Shown here piece by piece: positions 5,147 to 51,903 of a stretch of 64,000 bases of DNA (positions within the stretch are counted from its first letter, which is position 1; each line of letters starts with the position of its first letter). The DNA comes from Octopus bimaculoides (lineage: Eukaryota). Position numbers and translations under genes: made by a program. The notes under the pieces are model-generated. The model worked only from the letters and a program-made list of their open reading frames with translations, was not told the origin of the DNA and made no database searches. The DNA lies in contig NC_068998.1 in assembly GCF_001194135.2 (NCBI RefSeq), positions 24,533,591 through 24,597,590 on the forward strand, given 5' to 3'.

Positions 5147-5307
5147 GGCGTAGGAGTGGCTGTGTGGTAAGTAGCTTGCTTACAAACCACATGGTTCCGG
5201 GTTCAGTCCCACTACGCGGCACCTTGGGCAAGTGTCTTGTACTATAGCCTCGGGCCAACCAAAACCTTGTGAGTGGATTTGGTAGACGGAAACTGAAAGA
5301 AGCTCAC

Positions 5308-5364
<57 letters not shown>

Positions 5365-5578: not shown

Positions 5579-5984
5579 AACAAAATGGAATGCATTATAA
5601 AAAACATACTAAAAGGGAGTTCTTGAAAGGCTCTTTTGCAAAGTTTATGTGTGAAACAATTGTTGATGTCCGCATTGAGTTGATAAAATCAGTGGTTGCC
5701 AATATGATTTGCACTGACTAGTATTTTTAATATCATAGTCTCCAGTGTAAATGCTTGTTCTGTTGTCAGCAAAGTGAAAGCTGTGTAGTTATGTGTCTGT
5801 GTCATCAAAGTAGAACATTCCTCTGTCTTTGAAAGTCGTCACTGTTTATAGCTTGTTTGAATGTTGGGTTATCATTGTTTGGTGAGGATAGATGAAACAT
5901 CCAGGTTACCCAAGTTGCCATTGTAGAGTTGGTTTGTAAAAGCTGAATTTTGTGGGTCACCAATGAAGAGAGATGTTGAATGGG

Positions 5985-6850: not shown

Positions 6851-7974
6851 TTACACCGAATTTCTCTTCCTTTGCTTATTCTTTAATCCTTTAGTATTCA
6901 GATTATCTTGTTTAATATAATACTTATTAATTCATATTGTTTTGGATTAATCAAGCATTATCTTGTTGCTTTGAAATTTTGATGTTGTGACTGTTGATTT
7001 TTAGAATGACATTATAGGAAAGGTGGGAGAGGCCAGATTTGGCCAGTTTGAGCATAAAATATGTGGAATAATTTGGCTGAATATGGCCAGTTTAAACACT
7101 AAGTGGTTAAGGTGATTTTTATGCATATACTTACAAAATATTTGGTATTTCCTGGAAGAAATTTATCTACAGGGGGCCATTTTTTTAAAGAACATCATAT
7201 TAATTCTGCATAAATTTACTTTGTTTGAAATGCAGTGCTTTGTAACTGAGATACACAGATAATTTATTTGCATTTCAAATAACCTACAGTTGAATGACTG
7301 TCTTGGTTGCAGTGATTGAATCTGAAGGCAGCATTGCTAGTGTTGTCTTGCTGCTGTTTCTCCATCAATTTTGCTTTTCTTCATCAGCAATCATTAACCC
7401 CTTTTTCATCTTGTTGAACTATTGTCTAGTTTCAGTTCCAGTGGAAGTGATTACTAGCAATGTCCCCCCTCCTTTCAATGTTCGCATAAGGAGATTTCAT
7501 TCTTCTCTTTCTGGCACGAAAACACAAGATTTCATTCTTGCTGAAGCGAAAATGAAATCTTGTGTTTGTCTGCCAGAAACCAGTTCTCAATATAGCATGT
7601 CTTTCAGAATCCAACCATCTGACAAGTAGTGTATGTGGCCCAGCCATTGTATGTGTCATTGCAGTAGGATGAAAAGACTGAGTGAATCTGTGCACAAGCC
7701 AGGGCCTCATTGTTAGTGACTCAGATTGTTCAGGGTACGTCTCAGGCTATGCAATGGATGGTGCTGAAATGTTGATTTTGTCTATAGTGTACATGCTTTA
7801 GGCCTTGCTGATTTAACCCTTTGCCTGTCCACATCATTTTCATAAAATTGCCCAGATGTCTGTGCTTGTTTTCAGACTTTTAGTAGGCCCTTGTTTCTAA
7901 CGTTCTGTGTAGTATAAAGCTTTCCTGCCAGAAGTTCCAAGTTACACAGATGTGTGAAAAGAATTAGAAATGTG

Positions 7975-8210
7975 TTATTTCTTTACTACCCACAAGAGGC
8001 TACACACAGAGGGGAGAAACAAGGGCAGATCAATGAATTAAGTTGATAATATCGACCCCAGTGTGTAACTGGTACTTATTTAATCGATTCCGAAAGGATG
8101 AAAGGCAAAGTCGACCTTGGCGGGATTTGAACACAGAACGTAGCGGCAGACGATATACTGCTAAGCATTTCAGCCGGCATGCTAACATTTCTGCCAGCTT
8201 GCTGCCTTAT
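7975..8210 (-). mobile_element. SINE family C
   Basis: Reverse complement of the family C motif. Confidence 0.85.
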
Positions 8211-8560: not shown

Positions 8561-8839
8561 TACCATTTATCTTTTTATCGACACCAGGAAAATACATGGT
8601 GTTCATCACATATGATACACAGGATAGGCAAAGCAACGTACTGAGGATGCAGGCTCTTAATACAATAGCCATTTTGTAAAATATTAGCTTACATCTCTCC
8701 TACACTTTCATTGTCAGCCTAGCTAGTATGAAACTGCTTGTCTAATATATCTATTGATCTCAGACATCAGAAAGGCATAGAAACCATGGAAAATCTATCA
8801 AGACATCTGTATTGTAATGTATTACTTATAATAATCATC

Positions 8840-9045
8840 ATCATCATCATAATCTTTTAACGTCTGCTTTCCATGCTAGCATGGGTTGGACGATTTGACT
8901 GAGGACTGGTGAACCGGATGGCTACACCAGGCTCCAATCTGATTTGGCAGAGTTTCTACAGCTGGACGCCCTTCCTAACGCCAACCACTCCAAGAGTGTA
9001 GTGGGTGCTTTTACATGCCACCGGCACGAAGGCCAGTCACGTGGT
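8840..9045 (-). mobile_element. 3' UTR/tail of a young RTE-type element
   Basis: Reverse complement of 22880-23090, with (GAT)n tail. Confidence 0.85.
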
Positions 9046-9539
9046 AATAATTGTATATACATCTATATGGTGTGACATTTTTATCCATTTTAAAAAAGAA
9101 GCAGAATTTAATAGCATGTTGCCCTTTTCATATATGTTGGATTTACAACTGGTTACTCAGCAGTAAATTCCTTAGTATTAGTATAGGTAGCCTTTGATAA
9201 TCTCATGCATTTACATCTTTCCCTTCTCTAAATTACAAAGAAAAGCTGTTTATTTATCTCTATCTGACTATCTATCTCACCTTTTTTCTTTATATGTGCA
9301 TGTGTGTATATATACCTGCATGTATACATTAGTGTACTTTACTAAAGAAGACCACAAGTCAGATGGTAATGAAAACTGCATTATGGATCAAGTTTAGTGT
9401 CCAAGGAGAAGAACAGTTCCTCAGATTGATTTCCATATGCCAAGTTTTACGCATAAGGCTTGGGATGATCAGAGACTGTAGTGGGCAATGATTGCTAATC
9501 TGCTGTGCTGCTGGATCACAACAAACCAAAATCTGTAGC

Positions 9540-9989
9540 TTTTATCTTTTATCTGTTTCAGTCATTAGACCATGGCCATGCTGGGGCACTGCCTTGAAGA
9601 ACTTTTGGTTGAATGAATTGACCACAGTACTTATTTTTTGTGTTTTAAACCAACCTGGTACTTTTTCTATTATTCTATTTTTTTCTAAACTGCTGAGTTA
9701 CAGGGATGTAAACAAACAAATTCTGGTTGTCAAGAGGTGCTGGGGGACAAATGCAGAAACAAAGAGAGACAGATGCATACACACACACACACATACATGT
9801 ATGTGTGTGTGTGTGTGTGTGTGTTTGTGTGTGATGGACTTCTTTCAGTATCCATCTACCAAATCCACTCAGAAGGCTTTGGTCAGCCTGAGGCTATAGC
9901 AAAAGACACTTGTCGAAGGTGTCACACAGTGAGACTGAACCCGGAACAATGTGGTTAGAGAGCGAGCATTTCACCACACAGCCACACCT
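9540..9989 (-). mobile_element. SINE family A
   Basis: Reverse complement of the family A motif. Confidence 0.85.
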
Positions 9990-11622
9990 GGTTACACTTA
10001 AAAAAATAAACATAGATAACCTTATTTAGAGGCTACCACACCATTTTATGAAGAGCAATGAATACGTCTACAGTAAATCGTAAGCTCATACTCTAATAAT
10101 ACAGTATTTCTGTATTGGTTTAGTTAGTAAGAATGCTTTGTGTCTATGGCTTTCATAGCTTCTCCTTTTCCATAGACAGTTGAGACTGCCGACGTTAACT
10201 CTTTAAGCATGACATTCTAATATTGTAACAACACAGTACAGCCCGATCAAGCTGACTGTAGCAATATATTATAATACTCTCATACTAGCAATACTTTCAA
10301 AAGATAAATTACTTTCATATTGATTTTGCCAGAATATTTTATTATTGATTGATTACTTGCTTCTTTTTTTTTCTTTTTTTTTTCTTTTTTTCCACATAGA
10401 AATGAAAAGTTTAAGTCATCATAGATAATTTAATCTGCAATGTGATGTGGAATAAGATAAAAGATGTCTTTCCAATAAGATTTGCTAAACAAGATATGAT
10501 CGATAATCATAGGATATAATTAAAGGTATTGAATTTCACAAACAGAGGAGTAAAGTATCAGCAAAAAGTTCATAGGATTAATTGTAGAAATGAATAGAGA
10601 AGTGAATTCAATAGTTCATGTGAGTACCAAAGAGTTAATATAAGTATGAATATGTACTACCTGTTGAAGGATATATAGAAATCAAGACACAAATCATAAG
10701 TTAATGACAGAGGCTCTACACAAATCGATCTGATAAAAATAGCAGTCAATCACTCACTAAACTATAGCCTGCTGTCATTAAAACTGATATGATGAACAAT
10801 ATAACCTTGTCTGTGTTAATTTCAAAAATAACAGATGGTAATTATAACCTGAGTGATTTTGATCCTAGATCAACAGTTCAATCAGAGTTGATTTGGAGTT
10901 AAACAGCAATAAATAACAATATAGGATATTGCAGTACATAGTAATTAATTAATTATATACATATGAGAAAATATTTCTAGCTTTTCTCTAAAACTGTATG
11001 GGGTTATAACCCCTGGTGCTTCAGGAATATTACATAACGCACTATAATGTATATGAATTAATTCCTAATAGAATTAATTAATGTATAAATAATCAATACG
11101 ATTAGTTTTAATTAATATATAAAATTAATTAATTTATATGTTCTATGTTGTGTTATATAATTTTCCTAAAATATGAAGCTTATTAAAACTAACTTTATTG
11201 GAATAATATTCCTTTGGTTAACTTCTCCATGCATTGTAGTAACGGTTGTAGTTAGAGATGTTTAAGTTGTAGTTAAATGTCACTGAGTTGACTATGATCA
11301 AAAGCAAACTAGCCATGACAGTCCCAACTTATTTTCAGGTATAGTCGACTTTGGACAACACTGTGTAGTGGTTGGTTTTATGTAAGACAGTAGGATATAG
11401 TTTTGGATACTATTTTCAGCAAATTAGATGCCACAGACTGCTCCATCAAAGGCTCACCTCATTTTTGAAGTTATAAACTCCAAAACTATATCAGAGTCAG
11501 ACTTGAAATACTTTCTTGAATTCTGATAACATAAAAATTATATTCCTTGCGCAAAAGGAATATGATCAATACTTTTTTTTTATCTCCAAAAAGTGAAAAT
11601 ATAATCAAAAATATCTTCTTTC

Positions 11623-11822
11623 ATCTTTTATCTTTTACCTGTTTCAGTTACTGGACTGTAGCCATGCTGGAGCATCGTCTTAAGGGTTCCTACCAAATAA
11701 ATCAACCCCAGTACTTATTTTTGAGAAGTATGATTCTAATTTTATCAGACTCTTTTGCTGAACTGCTAAGTTACAAGGACATAAACAAACCAACACTGGT
11801 TATCAAGTGTTGGTGGGGAAAA
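11623..11822 (-). mobile_element. SINE family A, 3' half
   Basis: Reverse complement of the family A tail. Confidence 0.8.
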
Positions 11823-11923
11823 CCACAGACTATTTTCTCTTTTTTCACATATCTCTAACAGAGTCTACTCTGTTACAAGCTTTCAGACTATTCTGATCTG
11901 TGGATGAATAACTTAATACTTTG

Positions 11924-12157: not shown

Positions 12158-12571
12158 TCTCTTTTACTCTCTTTTACTTGTTTCAGTCATTTTGACTGTG
12201 GCCATGCTGGAGCACCGCCTTTAGTCGAGCAAATCGACCCGAGGACTTAATTTTTGGAAGCCTAGTACTTATTCTATCGGTCTCTTTTGCCGAACCGCTA
12301 AGTTACGAGGATGTAAACACACCAACATCAGTTGTCAAGCGATGTTGGGGGGGACAAACACAGACACGCAAACATATACACACACATATATATATATATA
12401 CATATATACGACAGGCTTCTTTCAGTTTCCGTCTACCAAATCCATTCACAAGGCTTTGGTCGGCCCAAGACTATAGTAGAAGACACTTGCCCAAGGTGCC
12501 ACGCAGTGGGACTGAACCCGGAACCATGTGGTTGGTAAGCAAGCTACTTACTACACAGCCACTCCTACGCC
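12158..12571 (-). mobile_element. SINE family A, near full length
   Basis: Reverse complement of the complete family A motif. Confidence 0.9.
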
Positions 12572-15116: not shown

Positions 15117-15928
15117 CGTGTGCAAACACTTGTATTTAGGAATAAATGTATTCTTGTCTGAGTGGTGGGTGCACATGTGCATGTGTGTGTTTGTGTATGA
15201 AGTGTGTGTTTGCTCCTTAAGTGTATGTGTGACCCTTTTAGTGTGCATATGTATTGTGCATGTTCATGTGTGCAAGTTGTATATGTGTTGTATGTTTGTG
15301 TGTATGTTATCTACACATTTATAAATGCGTATATATATGTATAAATTTCCACATATATAAATGTATATATGTTACATCTATACTTATGTGAATACGTATT
15401 TATAGATGAATGTAGATTGATTAACCTGTATACTTAAGTTTCATGTATGTGCCTCTGTATATTTATGAATATGTTTATCACACTTAGTTTTCTTGTAACC
15501 TTTTGCATAATGGGTCTTCAATTTGTTGCTATTCTGTTTCTCTGTTTACTACAATTCACTTTAAATGCCTTATGGCTTTATTGCCTGCTGGAAAAGTATA
15601 TTCTTATGCAATCTGATAAGTGAGTGTTTTGGTTGAATTCTTGGTGTGATACCTGAACTTTATATTTTAATTTTTATTTCTTTAGCATTTTTTTTAAAAT
15701 TCTCTATCTTTCATACTACATAAGAGGAAATTAGAATTCTTGTTAATATATTTTAATATATTTCCTGATGAAGTGGGTCTGATACAATTGTGTTGTCATG
15801 TAAGAATTATTGAAACATACGTAGGGATGAAATATAATTCCAGCTTTGGAAAAACTCAAGGTAAACTGTCATTTTTTAATACAATAAATATAAATATTTG
15901 TTTGTATATAAGTGTATGCATAATGTTT

Positions 15929-21204: not shown

Positions 21205-22427
21205 CACAGACATGAGAGAAGTAAATAGACACCCTTATAATCGTTAAAATTTATTTAAATCTGAAATTATACATTCAAATTATTTATTAATTATTATAAT
21301 GTGAATATCTAATACTTCGTAGACATGCCGTTTGCATTTTTCAATGTAAGGACCCTATTAGGCATGCTCCTGATCAGGTGACAAATATTCTCTTGAGGAA
21401 TTTCTTGCCAAATTTCATGCAGTAATCTCAAAAGATCAGACTTTGAAGATGCTTTCTTGTTCTTTTTATGAAGTGTCCTGTCCATTATGCCCCAGAGGCA
21501 TTCAATAGGGTTCATATCTTGTGACTGACTATGGAAGCTTTTTAATGTCATTCTCTTCCAACCAATCTTGAATCATTTTAGCTGTGTGACAAGGAGCCCC
21601 ATTTTCCATAAATAGTCTTCTTTAATCCTTTCACCACTAGAGAAGATTGGAAGGAGTCCTTTCTGCAATATGTACACATGATTATCTGAGTTTATGTTTC
21701 CTTTACACTCCACCAGCTCTGATCAACCAACCATTGCTCCAAATTGCTCTCCAGACCATCACAAAATAGCTGCCATGTTTCATTGTGGGCTGCAATCTTT
21801 TCACATCAAATTCTGATCACAGAGTCTTCAGGTCCACATTCAAACATTGTCAGAAAATACAACAAATCTGGACTTATCAAAGAATATGACAGTGTCCCAA
21901 AATGCTAGTGGTCTCTCCACCATCTCACTGGCCCAATCTTTTCTCCTCTTGATATTGACTGGCTGAAGAAGTGGCTTCCTTCTTGCTGATCTGCCATAGT
22001 AGCCAAGTTTGTGCAGATACCTGACAGTTGTTTTGGGACTGACATCAACTTGTTCTGCTATGTTAGAGGCCTTGCAATGAGGATTATCTTCTTTACAGAG
22101 CGATGAGTCCAGTCAGAGGGTTCTGGTCGACGTGGGTGAGGTGATGTGAACTCCCTCCCCTCTCTGGTGAATTGCACAATCACTTTATTAACTGTAGAAA
22201 GCGGGATCCCAAGGTTTTCTGTGATTTTACTCAGTGTCCACCTTCAATTTGACCCACATTACAGCTCGTTTGAAATTCGGACAGTTCCAAGGCTTCTTTT
22301 GCATGTGATATGATTAAACAGTCACATATACAAACTGAAACATAAAAATGTCAATTAATAAGAAATATAAACCTTTTCAAGTTAACATAAACCTAAAACA
22401 GCTCAATTTACTTTTGTCATGTTTGTG
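21205..22427 (-). mobile_element. Near full-length decayed Tc1 transposon (~1.2 kb)
   Basis: Imperfect TIRs (CACAGACATGAGAGAAGTAAAT versus the reverse complement of ATTTACTTTTGTCATGTTTGTG) in TA context. N-terminal [15 protein letters not shown] and C-terminal SQDMNPIECLWGIMDR...LIRSMPNRV...NGMSTKY*. Confidence 0.9.
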
Positions 22428-22459
<32 letters not shown>

Positions 22460-22463
<4 letters not shown>

Positions 22464-23092
22464 GAAAAGCTGAACATTAGAAGCATCAGTTGTGGCGTGC
22501 AAGAGAGACGATTGCGCTGGTATGGACATGTGGTGAGAATGGAGGAGGATAGCTGCGTGAAAAAGTGCCACACCCTAACAGTTGAGGGAACCCGTGGAAG
22601 AGGTAGGCCCAGGAAGACCTGGGCTGAGGTGGTGAGGCAAGACCTTCGTACATTGGGCCTCACCGAGGCGATGACTACGGACCGAGACCTTTGGAAATGG
22701 GCTGTGCGTGAGAAGACCCGGCAAGCCAAGTAAGNNNNNNNNNNNNNNNNNNNNNNNNNNNCACCATTTTGAGCGTGGCCGTTGCCAGTACCGCCTGACT
22801 GGCTCCTGTAGGATTTTCGAGCGAGATCGTTGCCAGTGCCCCTGGACTGGCTTGTGCGGGTGGCACATAAAAGACACCATTTCGAGCGTGGCCGTTTTCG
22901 TGCGGGTGACACGTAAAAGCACCCACTACACTCTCTGAGTGGTTGGCGTTAGGAAGGGCATCCAGCTGTAGAAACTCTGCCAAATCAGACTGGAGCCTGG
23001 TGTTGCCATCCGGTTTCACCAGTCCTCAGTCAAATCGTCCAACCCATGCTAGCATGGAAAGCGGACGTTAAACGATGATGATGATGATGATG
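22460..23092 (+). mobile_element. Young RTE LINE 3' end (ORF2 C-terminus, 3' UTR and (GAT)n tail)
   Basis: RRLRWYGHVVRMEEDSCVKKCHTLTVEGTRGRGRPRKTWAEVVRQDL...DRDLWKWAV, intact. Confidence 0.9.
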
Positions 23093-23437
23093 ATACACAC
23101 ACCTATATGTATACATACAAATAATTTTAATGTTGAGGTTGCTTTTGTTCAGTGACATATCTTTCTAGGGATTTTGGTGGGGTTTCTTTATTTAATTTTA
23201 TTCTTGTTATTTTGTGAAGAAACCTAACTTAAAGCAACTTTTTACTGATCAATTTTTAAACTCTATGTTCTAAGACTGGGAAAAGTAAGTAGGGGTGCAA
23301 TATTGAATTTTGTAACCTCCCACAAAATTTTAGGGGAGTGTAAGTGCACCCACTACACCCCCTGTTCCCGGGCCCTCATATGCACACACATGTGAACACA
23401 TGCAAATATAGATATGAAACTTACATATACAAATATA

Positions 23438-25346: not shown

Positions 25347-25506
25347 GTGCGGGAGTGGGTGTGTGGTAAGAAGCTTGCTTCCAAACCACATGTTTGTAGG
25401 TTCAGTCCGATTGTGTAGCTTCATGGGCAAGTATCTTCTACTGTTGCCTCAGGCCGACCAAAGCTTTGTGAGTGGATTTGGTAGACGGAAACTGAAAGAA
25501 GCCTGT

Positions 25507-25556
<50 letters not shown>

Positions 25557-25755
25557 AGTATTTGTGTGTTTGTGTTTGTCCCCCCACCATCGCTTAATGT
25601 TGGCGTGTTTACATCCCTGTAACTAAGTGGTTCGTCAAAAGAGACCAATACAATAAGTACTAGGCTTACAAAGGACAAGTCCTGGGATCAATTTGTTTGA
25701 CTAAAAGGAAGTGCTCTGGTATGGCTGCAGTCAAATGACTGAAACATGTAAAAGA
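25347..25755 (+). mobile_element. SINE family A
   Basis: Complete family A motif. Confidence 0.85.
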
Positions 25756-26062
25756 ATATACAAGTGTACACATATGTATAAATATATATGCGCAGTTCAT
25801 ACATATATATACAATAAAAGTAGAAATTTATATTAATCAATTAAAACCAGTGGTCTAGCATATTTTTAAAATCCGAAGATTTAAATTATATTACATACAA
25901 AATAGAAGGAATGACCAGCAAAAGTGGACTCCTATATGCTAAAAATAGATGCCGAATCATCTAACCAACGAAGAATATGTTCTCAGTAAAAATTTCAGCG
26001 AGACAACAGACTGTAAAAGGGCAAGACAAAGGAAAAAATACTAAATAAAAGAAACGATTAAC

Positions 26063-26127
26063 CTACGTACCATGGTTTCACCTGTTAATACTTGCACAAG
26101 CAAATATCTGCAGGATCATCAGCGTAG
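26063..26127 (-). ncRNA. Type I hammerhead ribozyme motif, copy on -
   Basis: Reverse complement reads CTACG-CTGATGA-TCCTG...CAGGT-GAAA-CCATG-GTA-CGTAG, identical to the copy at 26450. Confidence 0.8.
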
Positions 26128-26449
26128 TCTCTCGATTTATAAAATATGATTTCCAGAACTAGACACAGAACGGTCACCCGAAAGGGAACACGTGTAGAGT
26201 TCTACAAATTATATTCAGTGTATCCTTTCAAATGTCTTCAATCTGGTGTGCTGAGTCCGGAAATAACTCTGCAGTTAATAAATTTCTGCAGCTAATTTAC
26301 CGGTTTGAGAACATCATTATTTAAAATTGAATAATAAGGGTAGAAATTGATATTAATGAATTAAAACCAGTGGTTTAGCATATTTTAAAAAATCCGAAGA
26401 TTAAAATTATATAAAATTATATCAAAATTATATTTTATAAACCGACAGA

Positions 26450-26514
26450 CTACGCTGATGATCCTGCAGATATTTGCTTGTGCAAGTATTAACAGGTGAA
26501 ACCATGGTACGTAG
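26450..26514 (+). ncRNA. Type I hammerhead ribozyme motif, + copy 1
   Basis: Stem I CTACG/CGTAG, core CUGAUGA and GAAA, stem II CCTG/CAGG capped by ATATTTGC/GCAAGTAT, palindromic stem III ACCATGGT, GUA triplet (cleavage predicted after 26509). Confidence 0.8.
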
Positions 26515-26969
26515 GTTAATCGTTTTTTTATTTAGTATTTTTTCCTTTGTCTTGCCCTTTTACAGTCTGTTGTCTCGGTGAAATTTTTACTGAGAAAATA
26601 TTCATCGTTGATTAGATGATTCGGCATCTATTTCTAGCATATAGGAGTCCACTTTTGCTTGTCATTCCTCTTATTTTGTATGTAATATAGTTTTAATCTT
26701 CGGATTTTTTAAAATATGCTAGACCACTGGTTTTGATAGATTAATATCAATTTCTGCCCTTATTATTAAATTTTAAATAATGATGTTCTCAAACCGGTAA
26801 ATTAGCTGCAAAATTTTATTAACTGCAGAGTTATTTTCGAATTCAGCTCACCAGATTGAAGACATTTGAAAGGATACACTGAATGTAACTTGTAGAACTC
26901 TACACGTGTTCCCTTTCGGGTGAACGTTCTGTGTCTAGTTCTGAAAATCATATTTTATAAATCGACAGA

Positions 26970-27034
26970 CTACGCTGATGATCCTGCAGATATTTGCTTG
27001 TGCAGGTATTAACAAGTGAAACCATGGTACGTAG
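26970..27034 (+). ncRNA. Type I hammerhead ribozyme motif, + copy 2
   Basis: Same as 26450 with two stem II substitutions. Predicted cleavage after 27029, 520 nt from copy 1. Confidence 0.75.
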
Positions 27035-27125
27035 GTTAATCGTTTTTTTATTTAGAATTTTTTCATTTGTCTTGCCCTTTTACAGTGTGTTGTCTCGCTG
27101 AAATTTTTACTGAGAACATATATAT

Positions 27126-27178
<53 letters not shown>

Positions 27179-28151
27179 NNNNNNNNNNNNNNNNNNNNNN
27201 NNNNNNNNNNNNNNNNNNNNNNNNNNNNNNNNNNNNNNNNNNNNNNNNNNNNNNNNNNNNNNNNNNNNNNNNNNNNNNNNNNNNNNNNNNNNNNNNNNNN
27301 NNNNNNNNNNNNNNNNNNNNNNNNNNNNNNNNNNNNNNNNNNNNNNNNNNNNNNNNNNNNNNNNNNNNNNNNNNNNNNNNNNNNNNNNNNNNNNNNNNNN
27401 NNNNNNNNNNNNNNNNNNNNNNNNNNNNNNNNNNNNNNNNNNNNNNNNNNNNNNNNNNNNNNNNNNNNNNNNNNNNNNNNNNNNNNNNNNNNNNNNNNNN
27501 NNNNNNNNNNNNNNNNNNNNNNNNNNNNNNNNNNNNNNNNNNNNNNNNNNNNNNNNNNNNNNNNNNNNNNNNNNNNNNNNNNNNNNNNNNNNNNNNNNNN
27601 NNNNNNNNNNNNNNNNNNNNNNNNNNNNNNNNNNNNNNNNNNNNNNNNNNNNNNNNNNNNNNNNNNNNNNNNNNNNNNNNNNNNNNNNNNNNNNNNNNNN
27701 NNNNNNNNNNNNNNNNNNNNNNNNNNNNNNNNNNNNNNNNNNNNNNNNNNNNNNNNNNNNNNNNNNNNNNNNNNNNNNNNNNNNNNNNNNNNNNNNNNNN
27801 NNNNNNNNNNNNNNNNNNNNNNNNNNNNNNNNNNNNNNNNNNNNNNNNNNNNNNNNNNNNNNNNNNNNNNNNNNNNNNNNNNNNNNNNNNNNNNNNNNNN
27901 NNNNNNNNNNNNNNNNNNNNNNNNNNNNNNNNNNNNNNNNNNNNNNNNNNNNNNNNNNNNNNNNNNNNNNNNNNNNNNNNNNNNNNNNNNNNNNNNNNNN
28001 NNNNNNNNNNNNNNNNNNNNNNNNNNNNNNNNNNNNNNNNNNNNNNNNNNNNNNNNNNNNNNNNNNNNNNNNNNNNNNNNNNNNNNNNNNNNNNNNNNNN
28101 NNNNNNNNNNNNNNNNNNNNNNNNNNNNNNNNTATATATATATACATACAT

Positions 28152-28194
<43 letters not shown>

Positions 28195-28877
28195 CGTACA
28201 CACACATATATATATATATATATACAGAGAGAGAGAGATAGAGAGCGATACGTACATAAATGCACGCAAATACACGCACGCACACACACACACACACACT
28301 CACATTGAATATGAGCGACAGAAACATATATTTATATCAATGGAACGACTGTGACGAGGCTTATCATTTGTTCATAAGAAGCCATTTCAAGCTATAATAT
28401 TCAAACTAAAGTAAAGTTTGCAACCTGAAGTCAAATTTCTTTCTCATGTAATTTAAGAAATTTTAGCAACAAAACAAATAACTTTCCAGTTAACAATTTA
28501 TTGGGCTTCTTTAAAAGAACGACATAGAGCTCTATACGAATTCATTTAATTTGCTTTTATGAAGTTTTTGTTTGATGAAGTAGTTGTTGATTTTGCTGAT
28601 GCTAAAGTTAGCATTCGAAAGTGAATTTTATGTTTCTGTACAATTACTGAGACTTTAATTAGTTAACTTGAGAGTCCGCACAATATGGACCAATTGATCA
28701 CAGCGTGGCTGGTTATTCTAGAAAGGCCACAGTTTGCTGAGTAAAATAAATAATAATATATATGCTGTAGATATGTTTATATCATACATTTTAAACCAAA
28801 ATTTAAACAGTGATGCTCATACAGTTTTACAAAATCTTATTTTTATTTTCTTGATATAGTTTAAACCGAGAGCTTAC

Positions 28878-28891
28878 CTCGTTGAAGGAAT
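28878..28891 (-). CDS. Possible 14-nt microexon (IPST-)
   Basis: On -: TCTTTCATTCTAG acceptor and GAG|GTAAGC donor. Phase 0 start fits exon 32235. Confidence 0.3.
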
Positions 28892-29376
28892 CTAGAATGA
28901 AAGACGTTCATTATAGTTTCTAAACATGTAACCAAAATCAGTTTAGTATTTTGAAGGATGAGCAATTATCGCCCATATCGTCTTTAAATCTTATGTTAGA
29001 GAAGGTTGGTTGAATTGATATCGTTAATTAATAACTACGAGTAATATACTATCATCAATACTGTCAAGTCATTATCTTAATTGAATACAAACTACTGTAT
29101 AGTTTTCGAAGTAAAAATCACTATACGTATCTCTTACATTAAGTGTCATTGATCAGAGATAAACGTTTTGTAAGCCAGATCGATGATCTGTTTTGTTCAC
29201 CTATCGAGTCACTGTCTTGTAATTTACATTTAGCATGCGGAAGAAATCAATATTCTAATACACAGATTTCGTTGATAATTCTAAGTACATTTGTGATCAC
29301 ACACATATATACTTGTGTGTGAGTATATTTGTGTGTATGTATATAAGTGCATGTGTACATATTGGATTGTTTTATT

Positions 29377-29574
29377 ACTCTTTTACTTGTTTCAGTCATT
29401 TGACTGTGGCCATGCTGGGGCACCGCCTTGAAGGGATTTAGTTGAGGAAATCGACTCCAAGATTTTTTTTAACCCTTGTACTAATTCTATCGGTATCTTT
29501 TACTGAACAGCTAAGTTACTGGGACGTAAACAAACGAAGACCGGTTGTCAACCGACGGTGGGAGGACAAACGCA

Positions 29575-29646
<72 letters not shown>

Positions 29647-29740
29647 TTTCTTTCAGTTTCCACCTAGCAAATCACCTTACAAGGTTTTGGCCGGCATGAG
29701 GCTATAGTTGAAGACATTTGCTGTGTTCCGAACCCGGAAC
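29377..29740 (-). mobile_element. SINE family A (head truncated at a hairpin junction)
   Basis: Reverse complement of the family A motif. Confidence 0.8.
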
Positions 29741-29744
29741 ACAG

Positions 29745-30560
29745 CTTTGTCATACATGAAAATCAACACACTGATAGCAGACCTAGGATAATGAACAACG
29801 TGTCCCTTCTATGCGAACCCTATAAAACAAAGAAACATTTACAGAACTTCATGCACCGCATGCAGTTCTCAAGATATGGCCAGAAAGATAGGGTTCAGGT
29901 ATACAGGGGGGCTAGAAAGAAATTAGATAACATTGTATGTAATGAAACCAGTGGTACCTACCCTACGTACAGAAGTAAAGACTGGAATAGGATACAGAGA
30001 GTTTGTGACAAAGCAAACAAGGTGACAAGACCGACACATATCAAACAGCGATGTTTGTAGCGGTCACAGCTCATAGAGAACTATCCCGAAGATTTAGGAA
30101 AGATCTGAAGGAGGGCAAACTCAACATTAAGACCGTTGAAAAACCAGGGAGCTCCGTCAAACCACAACTGTGTAGGACGTACCACTTTGAGAAAACTATC
30201 TGCACCAATGATGACTGCATGGTATGTAAGATTAACTCTGGCATTAACTGTAGAACTAGTAATGTAGTCAACAGCATAAGGTGCATAGAAGGTACTGGTA
30301 AAGACAGGAACATGGTATACATGGGTGAGATATCTAGAAGCCTTGTGGAGAGACTTAATAGACATTTAGATAATATGACGACAAAAACAGTCCACCATAC
30401 TCTACCAACATGCCAAAGACCAATATGGAGGCACACCGGGTCAACTTGACATCCGCATTTTATCCAAGCACCCGAAGGACCCAACACTCAGACAAGAACA
30501 AGAGTACGTTCTTATAAATGAAATATCCCTACAACTAAATAGGAAATATGCGTAGAATGT
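29745..30560 (+). mobile_element. Penelope-like element 3' part (RT thumb plus GIY-YIG endonuclease), frameshifted
   Basis: RMQFSRYGQKDRVQVY..., then CTNDDCMVC..NCRTSNVV.SIRC..VYMGEISRSLVERLNRH, ending DPTLRQEQEYVLINEISLQLN. Confidence 0.85.
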
Positions 30561-30670: not shown

Positions 30671-32234
30671 GTAAACAGATAGATAAATAGGTAAGTGCAT
30701 AGGTAATGGGGATAGAAAAGCACACACACACACACACGCATACATACACAAATGGAGATTGAAATACGTGACCATATACATATAGAACACTGGTATATGC
30801 ACACACAAAGAGAGAGAAACACACAAATATACACATAAATACACATACATACATACATATGTATATACACATGCACACTGAGGTACACACGTGCGCACTA
30901 ATAAACAAACAAAAAAGAACGCAGCCCTGACAACGGACAGTCAACAAGTATTGAAGAGGTTGCAAGACGCAACGAAAATTTTAGAAAAAATAAATAAGTN
31001 NNNNNNNNNCAACGGACAGTCAACAAGTATTGAAGAGGTTGCAAGACGCAACGAAAATTTTAGAAAAAATAAATAAGTAAATGAGTGGAAATCGAACCGG
31101 TGTGTGTGTTAAGTAATCAGGCACTAAAAGAGAATGACTCTCCCTAGACAATAAAATATGCTTCAACACACGAATTCACATTAACAATCCTACAAACCAA
31201 ATACAAAATCGAAATATATTTATACATACATGCGTACACACACACATATAGAAAGATAGGAAGTGACGTCATCATCAACCGCCTGCAGCTGTTGTTCGGA
31301 GTCACTTTCAGTGCCTTCAGTGTTACAGAATGTCCATTTCTCGTATCGGTCTCGTCAGCCACGTCCGCTCTTATGATAAACAATGTGCTGGAGGGGCGGA
31401 ATGTCTTGGATCAACAATGTCATCCCCGTTGATATTATAAGCATATATAAAGCAGATACAAATAACAAGAAACCCCCCACCCACCCCAAAACCTGACTCG
31501 TACATTTTTGACGAGATCTATTAGGATAAAAGCCGGGCCGGCCCTGGATAAAAAGCAAAGTTTACCTTCATTGGGTTTGAAATCAGAATGTAAGTGTAAT
31601 GCGTTGCATCGGATGCCTTAACGAATCTGCCAATTAATCGCCATAATCTTGAATGAGATTAAATTGATATGTCTTCTAAGTAGGCGAGCAGCTAGTAGGA
31701 GAAACATCGCTGTATCGTTCAATTAACTCAGGTATTTATGAATGTATGAATTTCCATACATGTGAAATAGTATTGTCAGTGATAGCCAGACATTTCATGA
31801 ATTAATGATTTTGCAGTGGTCTGTCACTTACTATAAGCTTATGTAACTTGTTGCCGTCAATTTCTCCGTCATTATGCCATTATTAAGTCAGTCAACGTTT
31901 TATATCTCTTCCTATCTCTCTTTCTATGTTTCTTTACATCTCTGTTTCTCTATTTCATTCATTCCTCCATCAGTCTGTCTACATTTTTCTGTCTATTCCG
32001 TTCCTTTTCTTATTCAAATACAGCTCGAGGTAACGTCGTTGCTCGCCGGCAAGAAATAATCGTCAAATCTCTTTTAAAGCACTTTGAAAAATTCATTACA
32101 AGTTGAACATTTAACGAGAAAAAAGATAGAATAGTTATGGCTGTTATACTTTTGATCTTGTATCTGTTCGTTCACAATTTACTTAATCTTTGCAACCAAG
32201 AGGTCATGTCTTCACACGATTGCTGTTGTCTTAC

Positions 32235-37028: not shown

Positions 37029-37084
37029 GCGAGTAANNNNNNNNNNATATATATATATATATATGTATGTATATATATATATCT

Positions 37085-37305
37085 ACGTATGTGTGTGTGC
37101 ATGCGTGTGTTTGTCTCCCATCACCGCTCCGCTTGACAACCGGTGTTGGTGTGTTTACGTTCCCGCATCCTAGCAGTTCAGCAAAAGAGGCTGATAGAAT
37201 AAATACTAGGTTTAAAAAATAAGTCATGGGATCGAGTTGTTCAACTAAAACCGCACAAGGTGGTGCTCCAGCATGACCACAGTCAAATGACAAACAAGTA
37301 AAGGC
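37085..37305 (+). mobile_element. SINE family A, 3' half
   Basis: Family A tail motif. Confidence 0.8.
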
Positions 37306-40300
37306 ATATAATATATATATATATATATAAACGACAGTTTGGTAACATCTAGATTAGCTTTAATCAGAGCTGACCTGGTCGTAAATAATATTAGTGTTGC
37401 ATGTTATTACCTTTCTGGTTTCCAAATCATGGTATTGATTCATCTATATTGTTATTGTTGTTGTCATTTAGCCAGCCCCTGATTAATACTAATCAAGTAG
37501 GCATATGATCAAATTAGTTCTTGCCATGCCTATAGTGTTGGTCTTATTTTCAGATGTAGTTTATCTACTACTGTATTAATCAACGTGTCTTTAAATTATT
37601 TTAGCATGATAGCGGTTTGTTGGAATGAGATTTGGTTGCAGTTTCTAGCAGATCTAGCATGAATATTGTAGTGACGCCTAATACCAGTGGCCATTTTGGA
37701 GAGTTCGTCCAAGCATGCGCAGGGACATGTCTTCCAGAAGGCATGCAGGAAGTCCCTCATGCGCATGCGTGGTCATCCTATATCAAGCGTTCCCGCGTTT
37801 TCTCTACCTCTTAGCGCTGCACATTTGAGGATACCAAACGTCTACCACTGGGGCGTTCAATTACTTAGATTTATTCATATATGAAAATATTAAAAGCATT
37901 GTTTTGAATGCTAGACTTGAATGACTGATCTGATTTGCTTTGTTCTGGTAGAATTGGTGATGGGTTATGAAGCTCGTTTGGCAAGGTTTTAAGATACATG
38001 CAGGACATGTATGGACAGGTGCAGCGTTAGGTATAGCAATACCACTGGCTTTGCCGAATGAATGCTTCTCTTCAGGATAATTATTCTTTAATTTATATCA
38101 CAAATATATAAAATCCGAAGTACCTCACATATTGTTGATAGTGAGAGCTAAATATTTTGTGAAAGAATTATTACTTTATATGTCTGTCAAATGCTGTAAT
38201 GTTACGTATCTTGCTAAACTAAAAATATTTTACGTCGTATCAAAATTATGTCATAATCAACTTTTATATTTCTAACTATGCTTCGTTATGTCTATATTTC
38301 TCTATTTACATCTCTATCATTATTCTTAGTCAGCTTTATTTACCCCCGTTTCTATATAATTCACTACTTAATTTTTTATTTATGTTTGACCGTAACAGGA
38401 AAATCTTCTTCAAATCACACCTTATTTTCTTAATTAAAATAGGAAAGACATTGATTAGTGATTTACTAGTTGCATACTAAAAATTAAAAACAAAATAGTG
38501 TAGTTACAGCTTTAGCGTCTTTGATCGAAGTTCTGCTCGATTAACTTTCAGCTGGAGTAATTACCAACAATATACAATGATATACTGATACCCTTCACCG
38601 TTCTGTGAACACAAGTGTTCGGTATTCAATAAGATTACTTATTATTATGCTTATGAAGAATCCTAATTACTTATTATTGTCAAACAAAACGTAAGACCAG
38701 AACACATTTCTTGATCGGAAATAAAAGAGCAATGAAATCGAAGACTGTTATCGAATACGTGATGTTATGAACACGAAAGAATGAAAGACAAAATTGACAT
38801 CGGCTAGATTTGAACACTCAAGGCAAATGGCCGTAACTAAAAGCTCAACATATTCTATCCAAATCTCTGTTAATTCTGCAAATACATTGTCTATAATTAC
38901 TCTAATAATAATTTTATTAGTCAGAACAACAGGGTCGGAAACTGAATGTGTTTTTGTGTAAATTATGTACAAAGTTGAAAATAGATGACAAATGATAGAA
39001 GGTCAAAAAAGATACGTACTTGAGCTTAGAAAAGTCATACAATTTAGATTTAGTTTATATATATTTACTTGTGTAATATATATAAGAGGTTAGAGTAGGT
39101 TATTTTCAAACAGTAGTGGAAAAGCTAACAGTAAAAGGGAATAAGTAAATTTAGACGCAACAAGAAATTATCGAATTTAGAGTACATGATTTGAACTGCA
39201 ATTAATATAGGGAAGAGTGTATTTTGGGTGTTAACATACCTTTATAAGTTCATTAGATAAAAATAAACGAACTTAATGTTGAAGCAGTAAAATTTTTGGT
39301 TATGTCTTAAATACACATGAGACTTTTCTGAATAAATAGAGAAAATTGAATCGAAGTATATTATGAAGATATATATATATCTATAAAATCTATATGCATT
39401 TGGAAATGGAGAAAGTTTTGTTAGTCTAATAATATAAAGGGCAAAAAGAAGAAGAAATAACTAGCTGAAGAGAACTAAAATAGATATTGTGTTAATTGGA
39501 ATAGTTCGATTCGTTGGGGTGTGGTTTTGAAGATATCAGATGTAAGTAACTAATATAAAAAAAAAATTTAATATTAGTTTAAGGATTAAATAAGGTGTAA
39601 CGGCTGGATGATTAGGATGGTTGTGACGAAAGCCAGAATTATAGGATAATGACAAGAACCAAGCAGTGAGTTAATTAGAAGTATTTAAATCGGATTCAGA
39701 TATACAGTCAAAAGATCGATTATTACTAGAATATATAGTCCGTCAAATGGGCTGTCTAATGTATAATGAATAAAAGTAATATGCAAAAGTGGAAGGAAGC
39801 GATATGTGAGACAACAGGAAATAAATTTTGTTATAATAGAACGAAATATACTAAATATTTATGTAACGTATTGCTGATGTAGGAAAAAAGTTAATCAAGA
39901 TTAGAAGGTGGCTAGTTATATTTTGATACTTTGGTTTATGGCAAGTAACTATTTGACCAAAAACAGGTTATGTAAACCTAGGGATAAGAAAATTCTATTG
40001 TTGTGGGGGAAGTAAAGAAATAAAAATATGCATTTCTATAAATAAGACTGGTACAAGAGTGAGGCAATCTATGAAATGATATATTGGAGATAGAAAATTA
40101 TTAAGGAATATTCATAAGACCTCTAAGGGGAGTAATTAGAATTAGATTAATTTACCAGCAAGAATTATGTATGGATATAGGATCTAGTTTGATACTGAAG
40201 ATATGTTTTCAGGATTTTATATATTCATAAAGGAATCCTTTCAACTGATAAAAGACAAACTGGAGAACTACTGATGAGTTTTAACATTTAATTTTAGCAT

Positions 40301-45081: not shown

Positions 45082-45510
45082 AAAGGTGGTGAACTGGCAG
45101 AAGCGTTAGCATGTCGGGCAAAATGCTTAGCGGTATTTCGTCCATATTTTCGTTCTGGTATCGAATTCCGCCGAGATCGATTTTACTTTTCATCTTGTCG
45201 GAGTCAATCAAATAAATACCAGTTGAACACGGGGGGGGGGTGATGTAATCGACTGACCCCTCCCTCGAAATTACTAGCCTTGTGCCAAAATTTGAAATCA
45301 TTATTATTGTTTAACCCAAAAGAGGGTGCGTCGGACACAATGCTTAGCGGTAACATTTATGGCTCTTTGTGTTCTGAGCTAAAATTCCGCCGAAGTTGAC
45401 TTTGCTTTTCATCCTTTCAGAATCGATAAAGAAAGTACCAGTTAAACACTGAAGTCGATGTAATCGACTTACCCGCCTCTACTAAAATTACTGGTTTTCT
45501 GCCAAAATCT
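45082..45510 (+). mobile_element. Two tandem SINE family C copies. Others lie at 40420-40520, 46175-46325 and 62975-63105.
   Basis: Family C motif, twice. Confidence 0.85.

Positions 45511-51865: not shown

Positions 51866-51903
<38 letters not shown>

What the first reader, a model, noticed from the sequence alone, without database searches (positions are those of the whole stretch)
25812..27120. Retrozyme-like system: 520-bp non-coding tandem unit with a hammerhead ribozyme, three copies on both strands
Seen: a ~520-bp unit with no ORF carries CTACG-CUGAUGA-[stem II]-GAAA-CCAUG-GUA-CGTAG at 26450-26514 (+), 26970-27034 (+) and 26063-26127 (-). The two + cleavage sites (after 26509 and 27029) are exactly 520 nt apart. 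Stem III is tiny and palindromic (ACCAUGGU). Established: minimal type I hammerheads with palindromic stem III occur in tandem in Penelope-like pLTRs and animal non-LTR retrozymes. They cleave efficiently as dimers and can release unit-length RNAs that circularise. Inference: this is a cephalopod retrozyme or non-autonomous PLE family able to yield a 520-nt linear or circular RNA, mobilised in trans by Penelope RT (PLE remnants at 1-1520 and 29745-30560). All three copies have an atypical U10.1-U11.1 pair. I cannot tell from the sequence whether the family is already catalogued.
Basis: partly seen in the sequence, partly recalled or inferred. Interest (0 to 1): 0.92.

Follow-up and report, generated by a model that had tools for sequence, protein, structure and literature searches.

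The report
Hammerhead-ribozyme mini-retroelement in octopus DNA
A 520-bp non-coding repeat carrying a minimal hammerhead self-cleaving RNA motif sits as two head-to-head partial arrays in a (TA)n microsatellite of an octopus genome; it looks like an old insertion of a known type of parasitic element (Penelope-dependent "retrozyme"), so it is a real but fairly ordinary find.

Summary
A complete type I hammerhead motif (CUACG-CUGAUGA-helix II-GAAA-CCAUGG-UA|CGUAG) is at 26450-26514(+), 26970-27034(+) and 26063-26127(-). The two + cleavage sites are exactly 520 nt apart, and the unit has no ORF over 49 aa.

The layout is not a simple three-copy tandem. Two arrays, each longer than one unit, meet head to head: minus 25813-26423 (1.16 units) and plus 26424-27125 (1.34 units). 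(TA)n microsatellite flanks both outer ends. Published work describes this partial-tandem plus inverted-copy layout, and a microsatellite target bias, for Penelope-like elements (PLEs).

A predicted dimer folds as a double hammerhead with an 8-bp intermolecular helix III. The U•U mismatch at the base of helix II has a precedent in axolotl retrozymes.

The window is Octopus: its SINE family and its best PLE match are both in O. bimaculoides. A decayed PLE endonuclease fragment lies 2.6 kb away but shares no sequence with the unit.

Not shown:
- any other copy of the unit
- expression, cleavage or circularisation
- sequence kinship to an autonomous PLE

Copies differ by 5-6%, and the third ribozyme has a helix II-breaking change, so this locus is probably old and inactive.

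Verdict: a new member of a known kind (non-LTR retrozyme / non-autonomous PLE derivative). Interest is moderate to low.

The parts
25813..26423 (-). Minus-orientation array, about 1.16 units of the 520-bp repeat. Its own 5' end is at the centre (about 26417-26423, unit position about 250). Its 3' end is at 25813 (unit position 340) and abuts TA-rich flank.
   Evidence: 93.5-94.5% identical to the plus array as reverse complement
26063..26127 (-). Hammerhead copy A, identical to copy B. It is the only ribozyme in the minus array.
26402..26433 (.). Head-to-head junction of the two arrays. It contains a 10-bp mini-tandem, TAAAATTATA x3.1.
26424..27125 (+). Plus-orientation array, about 1.34 units. 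Its 3' end (...CTGAGAACATAT) merges into (TA)n by microhomology.
26450..26514 (+). Hammerhead copy B. Helix I: 26450-54 paired with 26510-14. Core CUGAUGA: 26455-61. Helix II: 26462-97 (a U•U mismatch, then 4 bp, a 2x2 internal loop, 9 bp and a UUGU loop). GAAA: 26498-501. Palindrome ACCAUGGU: 26501-08. A17 is at 26509.
26970..27034 (+). Hammerhead copy C. The core is intact. 27005 A>G keeps pairing as U-G. 27015 G>A breaks a basal helix II pair.
26510..27029 (+). Predicted unit-length 520-nt RNA between the two plus-strand cleavage sites. It is 33% G+C. Circular MFE is -113.7 kcal/mol, z = -2.7 against shuffles.
25795..25812 (.). Left flank, TA-rich (..CATACATATATATAC). It may be a target-site duplication with the right flank (ACATATATATA), but the sequence is low-complexity.
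   Evidence: read directly
27126..27178 (.). Right flank: (TA)n-(AC)16-(AT)n microsatellite, followed by an assembly gap at 27179-28132.
29745..30560 (+). Context only, not part of the element. A 5'-truncated, frameshifted PLE fragment covering the linker, a CX4CX2C motif and the GIY-YIG endonuclease. It has no similarity to the 520-bp unit.

Best explanation
This is one old insertion of a short, non-coding retroelement that carries a hammerhead ribozyme. Such elements are called non-LTR retrozymes, or non-autonomous derivatives of Penelope-like elements (PLEs). The host is an Octopus genome.

Proposed life cycle (inferred from the family, not shown here):
1. Tandem copies are transcribed.
2. 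Two hammerheads pair through their palindromic ACCAUGGU segments to form a double hammerhead.
3. Each cuts after GUA, releasing a 520-nt RNA.
4. A host ligase can circularise that RNA.
5. A PLE reverse transcriptase/GIY-YIG endonuclease supplied in trans nicks a (TA)n target and copies the RNA.

Features of this locus that bear on the template:
- Both arms are longer than one unit.
- Both arms read continuously across the cleavage site.
- The arms have different 3' ends, and each end lies in TA-rich sequence next to the (TA)n flank.
- The arms meet 5' end to 5' end.

I infer that both sides of the target break primed cDNA synthesis on a circular or multimeric, uncleaved template, and that the two cDNAs were then joined in the middle.

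The locus has since decayed. Copies differ by 5-6% and one ribozyme is damaged, so it is probably no longer a source of active RNA.
For: Shown:
- All three copies have a complete hammerhead core and helices.
- Chance gives 0.007 such motifs per shuffled window, and none in 2000 shuffles had an 8-nt palindrome.
- The cofold MFE of two copies (-52.0 kcal/mol, against 2 x -21.0) is exactly the double hammerhead, with an 8-bp intermolecular helix III and trans helix I.
- The 520-bp unit is non-coding and AT-rich, at 33% G+C.
- There are two head-to-head arrays of 1.16 and 1.34 units.
- (TA)n lies at both outer ends.
- Private substitutions in the region present three times are star-like (4, 5 and 3 per copy). 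This fits copies that were identical at insertion.
- A PLE endonuclease fragment lies in the same window. Its homologues are RT+CxxC+GIY-YIG proteins with the PLE 'DKG' motif.
- An independent O. bimaculoides locus (L002) has a head-to-head pair of min-HHR arms beside a PLE EN gene, flanked by (ATT)n.

From the literature:
- PLE insertions are partial tandems, often with an adjacent inverted 5'-truncated copy, and show a microsatellite bias; (TA)n is the bias reported for the Naiad clade (Craig et al. 2021).
- min-HHR pairs on opposite strands 100-700 bp apart have been seen (PMC4209133).
- Retrozyme units range from 51 to 972 bp and are related to PLE pLTRs (Li et al. 2026 preprint).
- Axolotl retrozyme hammerheads have a U•U mismatch at the base of helix II and a 2-bp helix III, and they cleave as dimers (PMC7229834).
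Against: - No second locus of the unit was found in 64 kb plus 21 kb of octopus DNA, and none in the metagenome or viral collections. The octopus genome itself could not be searched.
- The unit has no sequence similarity to either PLE remnant in the window.
- Its hammerhead differs from the PLE min-HHRs seen in L002. It has U•U instead of G10.1-C11.1, an 8-nt rather than a 4-nt palindrome, and a 36-nt rather than a 20-nt helix II.
- G10.1-C11.1 is described as highly conserved in PLE min-HHRs (PMC4209133).
- The hammerhead is not significantly more conserved than the rest of the unit: 2 changes in 195 nt against about 3% elsewhere, Poisson P about 0.07.
- TRF with the parameters of the Li et al. 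pipeline does not call the array, because 1.34 copies is too few.
- The assembly is gap-rich, and a gap begins 54 bp after the plus array.
- No cleavage, expression or circle data exist.
Confidence: 0.6

Rival explanations
1. This is the remnant of an ordinary PLE insertion: pLTR/UTR material of an autonomous element, or an internally deleted PLE. On this view it is not a separate retrozyme family. The 520-bp unit would be what is left of one Penelope-like element's terminal region, duplicated by the usual PLE partial-tandem/inverted insertion.
For: - The hammerhead is of the minimal PLE type, not the 'canonical' loop-loop type that defined retrozymes in 2020.
- The insertion anatomy is that of PLEs.
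- PLE fragments are nearby.
- Most genomic min-HHRs are thought to belong to truncated PLEs (PMC4209133).
Against: - The repeat closes on itself at 520 bp in both arms with no coding sequence. The template was therefore already a short non-coding unit, which makes it a non-autonomous element by definition.
- It has no similarity to the PLE fragments in the window or in L002.
- The difference from the best explanation is largely one of naming.
Confidence: 0.15
2. This is a local DNA-level duplication or inversion (a minisatellite or palindrome made by replication slippage or template switching in a microsatellite-rich region). The sequence would merely contain a hammerhead-like motif, either a fossil or a chance match, with no RNA-mediated mobility and no ribozyme function.
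For: - Only one locus is known.
- The region is full of microsatellites and SINEs.
- A generic min-HHR descriptor should hit a 2.7-Gb genome by chance about 300 times, extrapolating.
- Conservation of the motif is not significant.
- Rfam finds nothing.
- U•U replaces the conserved G10.1-C11.1 pair.
Against: - No shuffle gave an 8-nt palindromic helix III.
- The motif has a 5-bp helix I, a 13-bp helix II and a clean double-hammerhead dimer MFE.
- The head-to-head layout of arrays longer than one unit, between (TA)n flanks, is the specific PLE signature.
- The Rfam negative is uninformative.
Confidence: 0.17
3. The arrangement is an assembly artefact. Reads from dispersed copies of a repeat family would have been mis-joined in a short-read scaffold into an apparent inverted/tandem array.
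For: - The window has 11 N-gaps, one of them starting 54 bp from the array.
- Craig et al. note that PLE structures often break short-read assemblies.
Against: - The copies differ by 5-6% with star-like private changes, which fits real paralogous copies rather than duplicated reads.
- Both unit closures and the junction are continuous sequence without Ns.
- Even if the arrangement were mis-joined, the hammerhead-bearing repeat itself would still be real.
Confidence: 0.08

Closest known systems
Metazoan non-LTR retrozymes (Cervera & de la Peña 2020, PMC7229834; Li, Clavereau & Pollet 2026 preprint, 10.64898/2026.07.22.740005)
   Same: - The repeat is short, AT-rich and non-coding, with one type I hammerhead per unit and hammerheads in series.
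- Helix III is weak and palindromic, which implies cleavage as a dimer.
- It has a U•U mismatch at the base of helix II, like axolotl HHR_Amex2.
- The unit length of 520 bp lies inside the reported 51-972 bp range.
- It co-occurs with PLEs.
   Different: - The hammerhead is the minimal PLE type, with no evident loop 1-loop 2 contacts, not the 'canonical' type of the 2020 definition.
- The plus array has only 1.34 units, too few for the TRF step of the 2026 pipeline.
- There is an inverted partner array.
- No family, circRNA or expression has been shown.
- I found no report of cephalopod retrozymes in the held library.
min-HHRs in the pLTRs of Penelope-like elements (Cervera & de la Peña 2014, PMC4209133)
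   Same: - It is type I, with a short helix I (5 bp), an enlarged helix II, a palindromic 15.2-16.2/loop 3 and an extra or unpaired nucleotide after A9.
- Pairs occur on opposite strands a few hundred bp apart.
- The insertions are tandem and inverted.
   Different: - It has U•U instead of the highly conserved G10.1-C11.1.
- Helix II is much longer (36 nt, with an internal loop).
- The palindrome is 8 nt long.
- No RT-EN ORF lies between the repeats.
- There is no similarity to the octopus PLE min-HHR arms in L002.
[quoted passage not shown] 2021)
   Same: It is a short non-coding unit that forms head-to-tail multi-copy insertions, presumably using a PLE RT-EN in trans, with microsatellite targets.
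   Different: Those elements share their 3' ends with an autonomous partner and lack hammerheads. Here no partner has been identified, and a hammerhead is present.
Newt satellite 2 and Schistosoma Sm-alpha hammerhead repeats
   Same: They are genomic tandem or SINE-like repeats that encode type I hammerheads. The newt ones act as double hammerheads.
   Different: Those carry canonical hammerheads with tertiary loop contacts and occur as very large families. The copy number of this unit is unknown.

Membership tests
Hammerhead ribozyme, type I | Conserved core: C3U4G5A6N7G8A9, G12A13A14, the A15.1-U16.1 pair, and H17 not G | tested here: met
   CUGAUGA, GAAA and GUA|C are present in all three copies.
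Hammerhead ribozyme, type I | Three helices around the core, with helix I open | tested here: met
   Helix I has 5 bp. Helix II has 4+9 bp. Helix III has 2 bp plus a CAUG loop, or 8 bp between molecules.
Hammerhead ribozyme, type I | G10.1-C11.1 pair at the base of helix II | tested here: not met
   All copies have U•U here. Axolotl HHR_Amex2 is a cleaving precedent (PMC7229834).
Hammerhead ribozyme, type I | Match to the Rfam hammerhead covariance models | tested here: not met
   There was no hit at the gathering threshold or at E<=10. The models also miss textbook PLE min-HHRs in L002, so this test is uninformative for this subclass.
Hammerhead ribozyme, type I | Covariation that supports the helices | tested here: inconclusive
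   Only three copies exist. One change keeps pairing (U-A to U-G) and one breaks a pair.
Hammerhead ribozyme, type I | Mg2+-dependent self-cleavage at H17 | not testable with these tools
   This needs in vitro transcription of monomer and dimer.
Non-LTR retrozyme | A short non-coding unit in head-to-tail tandem, with at least two consecutive hammerheads | tested here: met
   Two plus-strand hammerheads lie 520 nt apart and there is no ORF over 49 aa. The case is marginal: at 1.34 units, TRF does not call the array.
Non-LTR retrozyme | Low G+C, and no LTR, PBS or PPT | tested here: met
   G+C is 33%. There are no terminal repeats other than the unit itself. PBS and PPT were not specifically searched for.
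Non-LTR retrozyme | Canonical type I hammerhead with loop 1-loop 2 tertiary contacts (the 2020 definition) | tested here: not met
   The motif is the minimal PLE type. Helix I is open with no defined loop 1. The 2026 pipeline accepts minimal models.
Non-LTR retrozyme | A multi-copy dispersed family in the genome | not testable with these tools
   There is no other copy in the window or in L002. The octopus genome could not be searched by DNA.
Non-LTR retrozyme | Expressed as linear and circular unit-length RNA | not testable with these tools
   This needs RNA-seq, a northern blot or RNase R treatment.
PLE-mobilised / PLE-derived element | Insertion anatomy: a partial tandem plus an adjacent inverted 5'-truncated copy | tested here: met
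   Arrays of 1.16 and 1.34 units lie head to head. This matches Craig et al. 2021.
PLE-mobilised / PLE-derived element | Microsatellite target | tested here: met
   (TA)n lies at both outer ends. The published (TA)n and (CA)n biases are for the Naiad and Chlamys clades, and a bias was hypothesised for Neptune.
PLE-mobilised / PLE-derived element | Sequence similarity to the pLTR or 3' end of an autonomous PLE | tested here: not met
   There is no similarity to the PLE fragments in the window or in L002. Only three PLE fragments were available, so the test is weak.
PLE-mobilised / PLE-derived element | A common 3' end for all copies (target-primed reverse transcription from a linear RNA) | tested here: not met
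   The arms end at unit positions 340 and about 181. This is compatible with a circular or multimeric template, or with later deletion.

The most novel reading that the evidence does not exclude
The unit belongs to a still-active octopus retrozyme family with a variant hammerhead (a U•U mismatch at the base of helix II, a 36-nt helix II and an 8-nt palindromic helix III) that produces 520-nt circular RNAs. The two-armed insertion, with arms longer than one unit and different TA-rich 3' ends, would then be a genomic footprint of twin-primed, rolling-circle reverse transcription of a circular RNA by a PLE enzyme. That mechanism has been proposed but never documented. A read-through transcript of the locus would also fold into a near-perfect hairpin of about 600 bp, which could be a substrate for the extensive cephalopod RNA editing or for small-RNA pathways.
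Probability: 0.15. Interest if true: 0.55.

Novelty: new member of a known kind. Interest (0 to 1): 0.33.

Why it matters
Hammerhead-bearing repeats are abundant in animal genomes, and retrozymes are now thought to be non-autonomous PLE derivatives. Another example therefore changes little by itself.

Its modest value has two parts:
- I found no report of retrozymes in cephalopods in the papers available here. Cephalopod genomes are repeat-rich and have unusual RNA biology.
- This locus has a clean anatomy: two arms longer than one unit, intact across the cleavage site, with different TA-rich 3' ends inside a (TA)n target. If the same pattern recurs at many loci, it would be direct genomic evidence for reverse transcription from circular or multimeric RNA templates by PLE machinery, which is still a hypothesis.

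Tried and rejected
- **Rfam.** I ran it at the gathering threshold and at E<=10 on 1.5 kb and on 93 nt. No hammerhead hit appeared, only spurious miRNA-like hits on microsatellite. The calibration on L002 shows that Rfam is blind to PLE min-HHRs.
- **Other copies of the unit.** I looked in the window by BLAST, in metagenome contigs with two patterns and in viral contigs. I also searched the protein database with the unit's 49-aa spurious ORF as a proxy for DNA. Nothing was found.
- **Identifying the organism or a PLE relative from window ORFs.** The word-indexed protein search with the PLE EN ORF found no homologue. The search with the LINE RT tail returned only unnamed ENA hits. Exact-protein contig look-ups of the two window ORFs found nothing on record, and the look-up of P0001, the best hit, returned only an unnamed 1.6-kb ENA contig. 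The exhaustive representative search succeeded.
- **Other hammerhead-like strings.** Those at 15765-15816(+), 7356-7387(-) and 31505-31587(+) are rejected, because helix II or helix I pairing is absent or minimal.
- **The idea that the plus array is the 5' pLTR of a full PLE ending in the EN fragment at 30051-30449.** The spacing would fit, but 28133-29745 encodes no RT.
- **The PLE remnant at 1-1520.** There is no Pfam hit and no significant BLASTP match to a Neptune-like PLE. It rests only on motifs I read by eye (FLDDCF; LIYCITCPNC..Y..QT).
- **Literature searches.** Searching the SINE sequence gave no hits. Lünse et al. 2017 (PMC5785218) is not held.
- **TRF.** The tool's period limit is 500. 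My own run with a limit of 1000 still did not call the 1.34-copy array.
Full report
**1. Observation**

The sequence at 25400-27600 contains the 65-nt string CTACG-CTGATGA-TCCTGCAGATATTTGCTTGTGCAAGTATTAACAGGT-GAAA-CCATGG-TA-CGTAG. It occurs at 26450-26514 (+) and, identically, at 26063-26127 (-). At 26970-27034 (+) it occurs with two substitutions.

Read as a type I hammerhead, copy B has these parts:
- Helix I: 26450-54 paired with 26510-14 (5 bp).
- Core CUGAUGA: 26455-61.
- Helix II: 26462-97. This is a U•U mismatch, then CCUG/CAGG, a 2x2 internal loop, then 9 bp capped by UUGU.
- G12-A15.1 (GAAA): 26498-501.
- Palindrome ACCAUGGU: 26501-08.
- A17: 26509.

The two plus-strand cleavage sites (after 26509 and after 27029) are exactly 520 nt apart. 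No ORF longer than 49 aa lies in the unit.

A generic min-HHR descriptor had these requirements:
- helix I of at least 4 bp
- the CUGANGA core
- helix II of at least 4 bp, with a bulge or mismatch allowed at its base
- GAAA
- a palindromic helix III
- H17 not G

It finds copies A and B in the window. It gave 14 hits in 2000 dinucleotide-preserving shuffles, none with an 8-nt palindrome. The motif is therefore well beyond chance for one window. A multi-gigabase genome would still hold a few hundred generic chance hits, so context matters.

**2. Architecture**

The array is not three tandem copies. Repeat finding, BLAST and alignment show two partial arrays in head-to-head orientation:
- A minus-orientation array at 25813-26423. 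It runs from unit position about 250 through 519/0 to 340, which is 1.16 units.
- A plus-orientation array at 26424-27125. It runs from position 0 through 519/0 to about 181, which is 1.34 units.

Their 5' ends abut at about 26420, where there is a small 10-bp tandem.

The outer (3') ends lie at different unit positions. Both fall in TA-rich unit sequence that merges into TA-rich flank:
- Left flank: ...CATACATATATATAC.
- Right flank: ...ACATAT-ATATATTT(AC)16(AT)n, followed by an assembly gap at 27179-28132.

ACATATATATA may be a target-site duplication, but the sequence is too simple to judge.

All three hammerheads are intact across the scissile bond, and both arms read through a full unit closure.

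Pairwise identity between copies is 93.5-95%. In the 178-nt stretch present three times, private changes number 4, 5 and 3 per copy. That is a star pattern, as expected if the copies were identical at insertion.

The hammerhead has 2 changes in 195 nt-copies, against about 3% elsewhere (Poisson P about 0.07). This is a trend, not evidence of selection.

Copy C's two changes lie in helix II. One keeps pairing (U-A to U-G). The other breaks C10.3-G11.3 and shifts the predicted fold.

**3. Folding**

A single hammerhead folds with helices I and II (-22.7 kcal/mol). It can form only a 2-bp helix III with a CAUG loop.

Two copies cofold to -52.0 kcal/mol, against 2 x -21.0. The MFE is exactly the double hammerhead: an 8-bp intermolecular ACCAUGGU helix, both helices II, and helix I formed in trans.

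The 520-nt unit RNA is moderately structured. The linear z-score is -2.7. The circular MFE is -113.7 kcal/mol with z = -2.7 and 63% of bases paired. The plus polarity is more stable than the minus.

**4. Rfam**

No hammerhead family matches at the gathering threshold, or at E<=10 on 1.5 kb or 93 nt.

As a calibration, two textbook PLE-type min-HHRs that I found in an O. bimaculoides locus are also invisible to Rfam. The negative result is therefore uninformative for this subclass.

**5. Host and neighbours**

The ORF at 30051-30449 has a weak GIY-YIG Pfam hit and 322 homologues in the representative library.

The long homologues (P0098, P0157, P0060) carry these features:
- the PLE 'DKG' motif
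- RT motifs, including YVDD
- a CX2-5CxxC linker
- a C-terminal GIY-YIG domain

The ORF aligns to residues 796-917 of P0098. It has its own CX4CX2C motif (CTNDDCMVC). Craig et al. assign that motif to the Neptune, Nematis and Naiad clades. So 29745-30560 is a decayed, 5'-truncated PLE fragment.

Its best hit, P0008, is XP_052825841.1 of Octopus bimaculoides. The locus that encodes P0008 (L002, CM046608.1:15290366-15311199) also contains the window's SINE. That SINE is about 430 bp long and has a tRNA-like head. It matches at up to 90.6% identity, which is the same range as between copies within the window. The window is therefore from Octopus, either O. bimaculoides or a close relative.

The 520-bp unit has no similarity to the rest of the window, to either PLE remnant, or to L002. 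The remnant proposed at 1-1520 could not be confirmed with tools.

**6. An in-genome comparator**

L002 holds a head-to-head pair of 102-nt arms (9107-9208 and 9822-9923, 86% complementary). Each arm carries a canonical PLE min-HHR:
- Sequence of the minus-strand copy: CUGAUGA-A-GGCU...GGCC-GAAA-CGU-U. The plus-strand copy reads UUGAUGA-A-GGCC...GCC-GAAA-CGU-U.
- Positions: 9163-9204 (-) and 9826-9867 (+).
- Both have the extra nucleotide after A9, the G10.1-C11.1 pair and the ACGU palindrome. The minus copy has the canonical C3; the plus copy has U3.

The arms have (ATT)n at their inner edges and sit directly upstream of the PLE EN gene.

Octopus PLE insertions therefore do show the inverted, microsatellite-associated anatomy. 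The hammerhead of the 520-bp unit is a different variant. It has U•U, an 8-nt palindrome, a 36-nt helix II and a 5-bp helix I.

**7. Comparison with the literature**

[quoted passage not shown] They note pairs on opposite strands 100-700 bp apart. They also report low activity in vitro, even as dimers.
- Cervera & de la Peña 2020 (PMC7229834) define non-LTR retrozymes as AT-rich tandem repeats of roughly 170-400 nt that are expressed as circular RNAs. They describe axolotl HHR_Amex2, which has a U•U mismatch at the base of helix II and a 2-bp helix III with a tetraloop, and which cleaves better as a dimer.
- Li et al. 2026 (preprint) extend unit sizes to 51-972 bp, accept minimal HHR models, and show that retrozymes are related to PLE pLTRs.
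- Craig et al. 2021 describe PLE insertions as partial tandems, often with an adjacent inverted 5'-truncated copy. [quoted passage not shown]

None of the papers I could search mentions retrozymes or hammerheads in cephalopods. That is absence of evidence within this library only.

**8. Interpretation**

The best reading (confidence about 0.6) is a single, old insertion of a non-autonomous, hammerhead-bearing element of the retrozyme/PLE-derivative kind.

These points are shown:
- the motif
- the dimer-competent fold
- the non-coding 520-bp unit
- the head-to-head arrays longer than one unit
- the TA-microsatellite flanks
- the octopus host
- PLE fragments nearby

These points are inferred:
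- transcription, dimer cleavage after GUA, and circularisation
- reverse transcription by a PLE enzyme in trans
- from the differing TA-rich 3' ends, the arms longer than one unit and the intact cleavage sites, that both sides of the break primed on a circular or uncleaved multimeric template

Four findings weigh against the locus being an active system:
- Copies diverge by 5-6%.
- Copy C is damaged.
- No second locus was found.
- No autonomous partner was identified.

The rival readings are a plain PLE terminal remnant (largely a naming difference), a DNA-level duplication with a fossil or chance motif, and a mis-assembly. They are listed with their tests.

**9. Verdict**

The element is a new member of a known kind. 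Interest is about 0.33.

It would rise if a genome-wide search showed an abundant family with conserved or covarying hammerheads and recurrent two-armed insertions, or if RNA data showed 520-nt circles.

Noticed in passing
window 5153-5583, 9539-9990, 11619-11830, 12160-12569(-), 25352-25755, 29370-29721(-), 37047-37331, 51642-51966, 60702-60968, 61955-62339, 63727-64000: A SINE-like family of about 430 bp occurs at least 11 times in the window. It has a tRNA-like head (GGAGTGGCTGTGTGGTAAG...GGTTCAGTCCCAC), an internal (TA)n/(TG)n microsatellite and a conserved tail (...CAGTCAAATGACTGAAACAAGTAAAAGA). One copy ends about 55 bp left of the hammerhead array. The same family is in O. bimaculoides L002 at up to 90.6% identity. 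ARAGORN calls no tRNA in the window.
   Followed up: partly
L002 9107-9208(-) and 9822-9923(+), O. bimaculoides CM046608.1: A head-to-head pair of 102-nt arms, each with a min-HHR of the PLE type (extra A after A9, G10.1-C11.1, ACGU palindrome); the minus copy has the canonical CUGAUGA core and the plus copy reads UUGAUGA. They are separated by 613 nt, with (ATT)n at both inner edges, immediately upstream of a PLE endonuclease gene (10001-10834, XP_052825841.1). Rfam does not detect them.
   Followed up: partly
window 29745-30560 (+): A frameshifted, 5'-truncated PLE fragment covering the linker, CX4CX2C and GIY-YIG. It is 67% identical in DNA to the L002 copy. No hammerhead or pLTR-like repeat follows it, only microsatellite.
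   Followed up: yes
window 1-1520 (+): A stop-riddled reading frame with RT-tail-like (KCFLDDCFSFW) and GIY-YIG-like (LIYCITCPNCKENY..QT) strings, interrupted by low-complexity sequence. It is probably a second, older PLE of another clade. There is no Pfam hit and no BLASTP match to a Neptune-like PLE.
   Followed up: partly
window 22419-22733 (+): An ORF ending in the ...RLRWYGHVVRM...GRGRPRKTW...DRDLW motif typical of non-LTR (LINE) reverse-transcriptase C-termini. It is cut by an N-gap. Its best database relatives are unnamed ENA metagenome proteins (81% identity).
   Followed up: partly
window 26402-26433: A 10-bp mini-tandem (TAAAATTATA x3.1) lies exactly at the head-to-head junction of the two arrays. 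It may be a by-product of joining the two cDNA ends, or later slippage.
   Followed up: no
window 3169-3531 vs 48069-48458(-); 8834-9030 vs 22897-23094(-); 4018-4247, 8039-8209, 45084-45517, 46178-46332, 62929-63114: Further unclassified interspersed repeat families at 75-94% identity. The window appears to be almost entirely repeats and microsatellites, with no recognisable host exon.
   Followed up: no
window 25813-27125 as a whole: A read-through transcript of either strand would fold into a hairpin of about 600 bp at about 94% complementarity. That would sequester hammerhead B against antisense copy A and would be a plausible dsRNA substrate for ADAR editing or small-RNA pathways.
   Followed up: no
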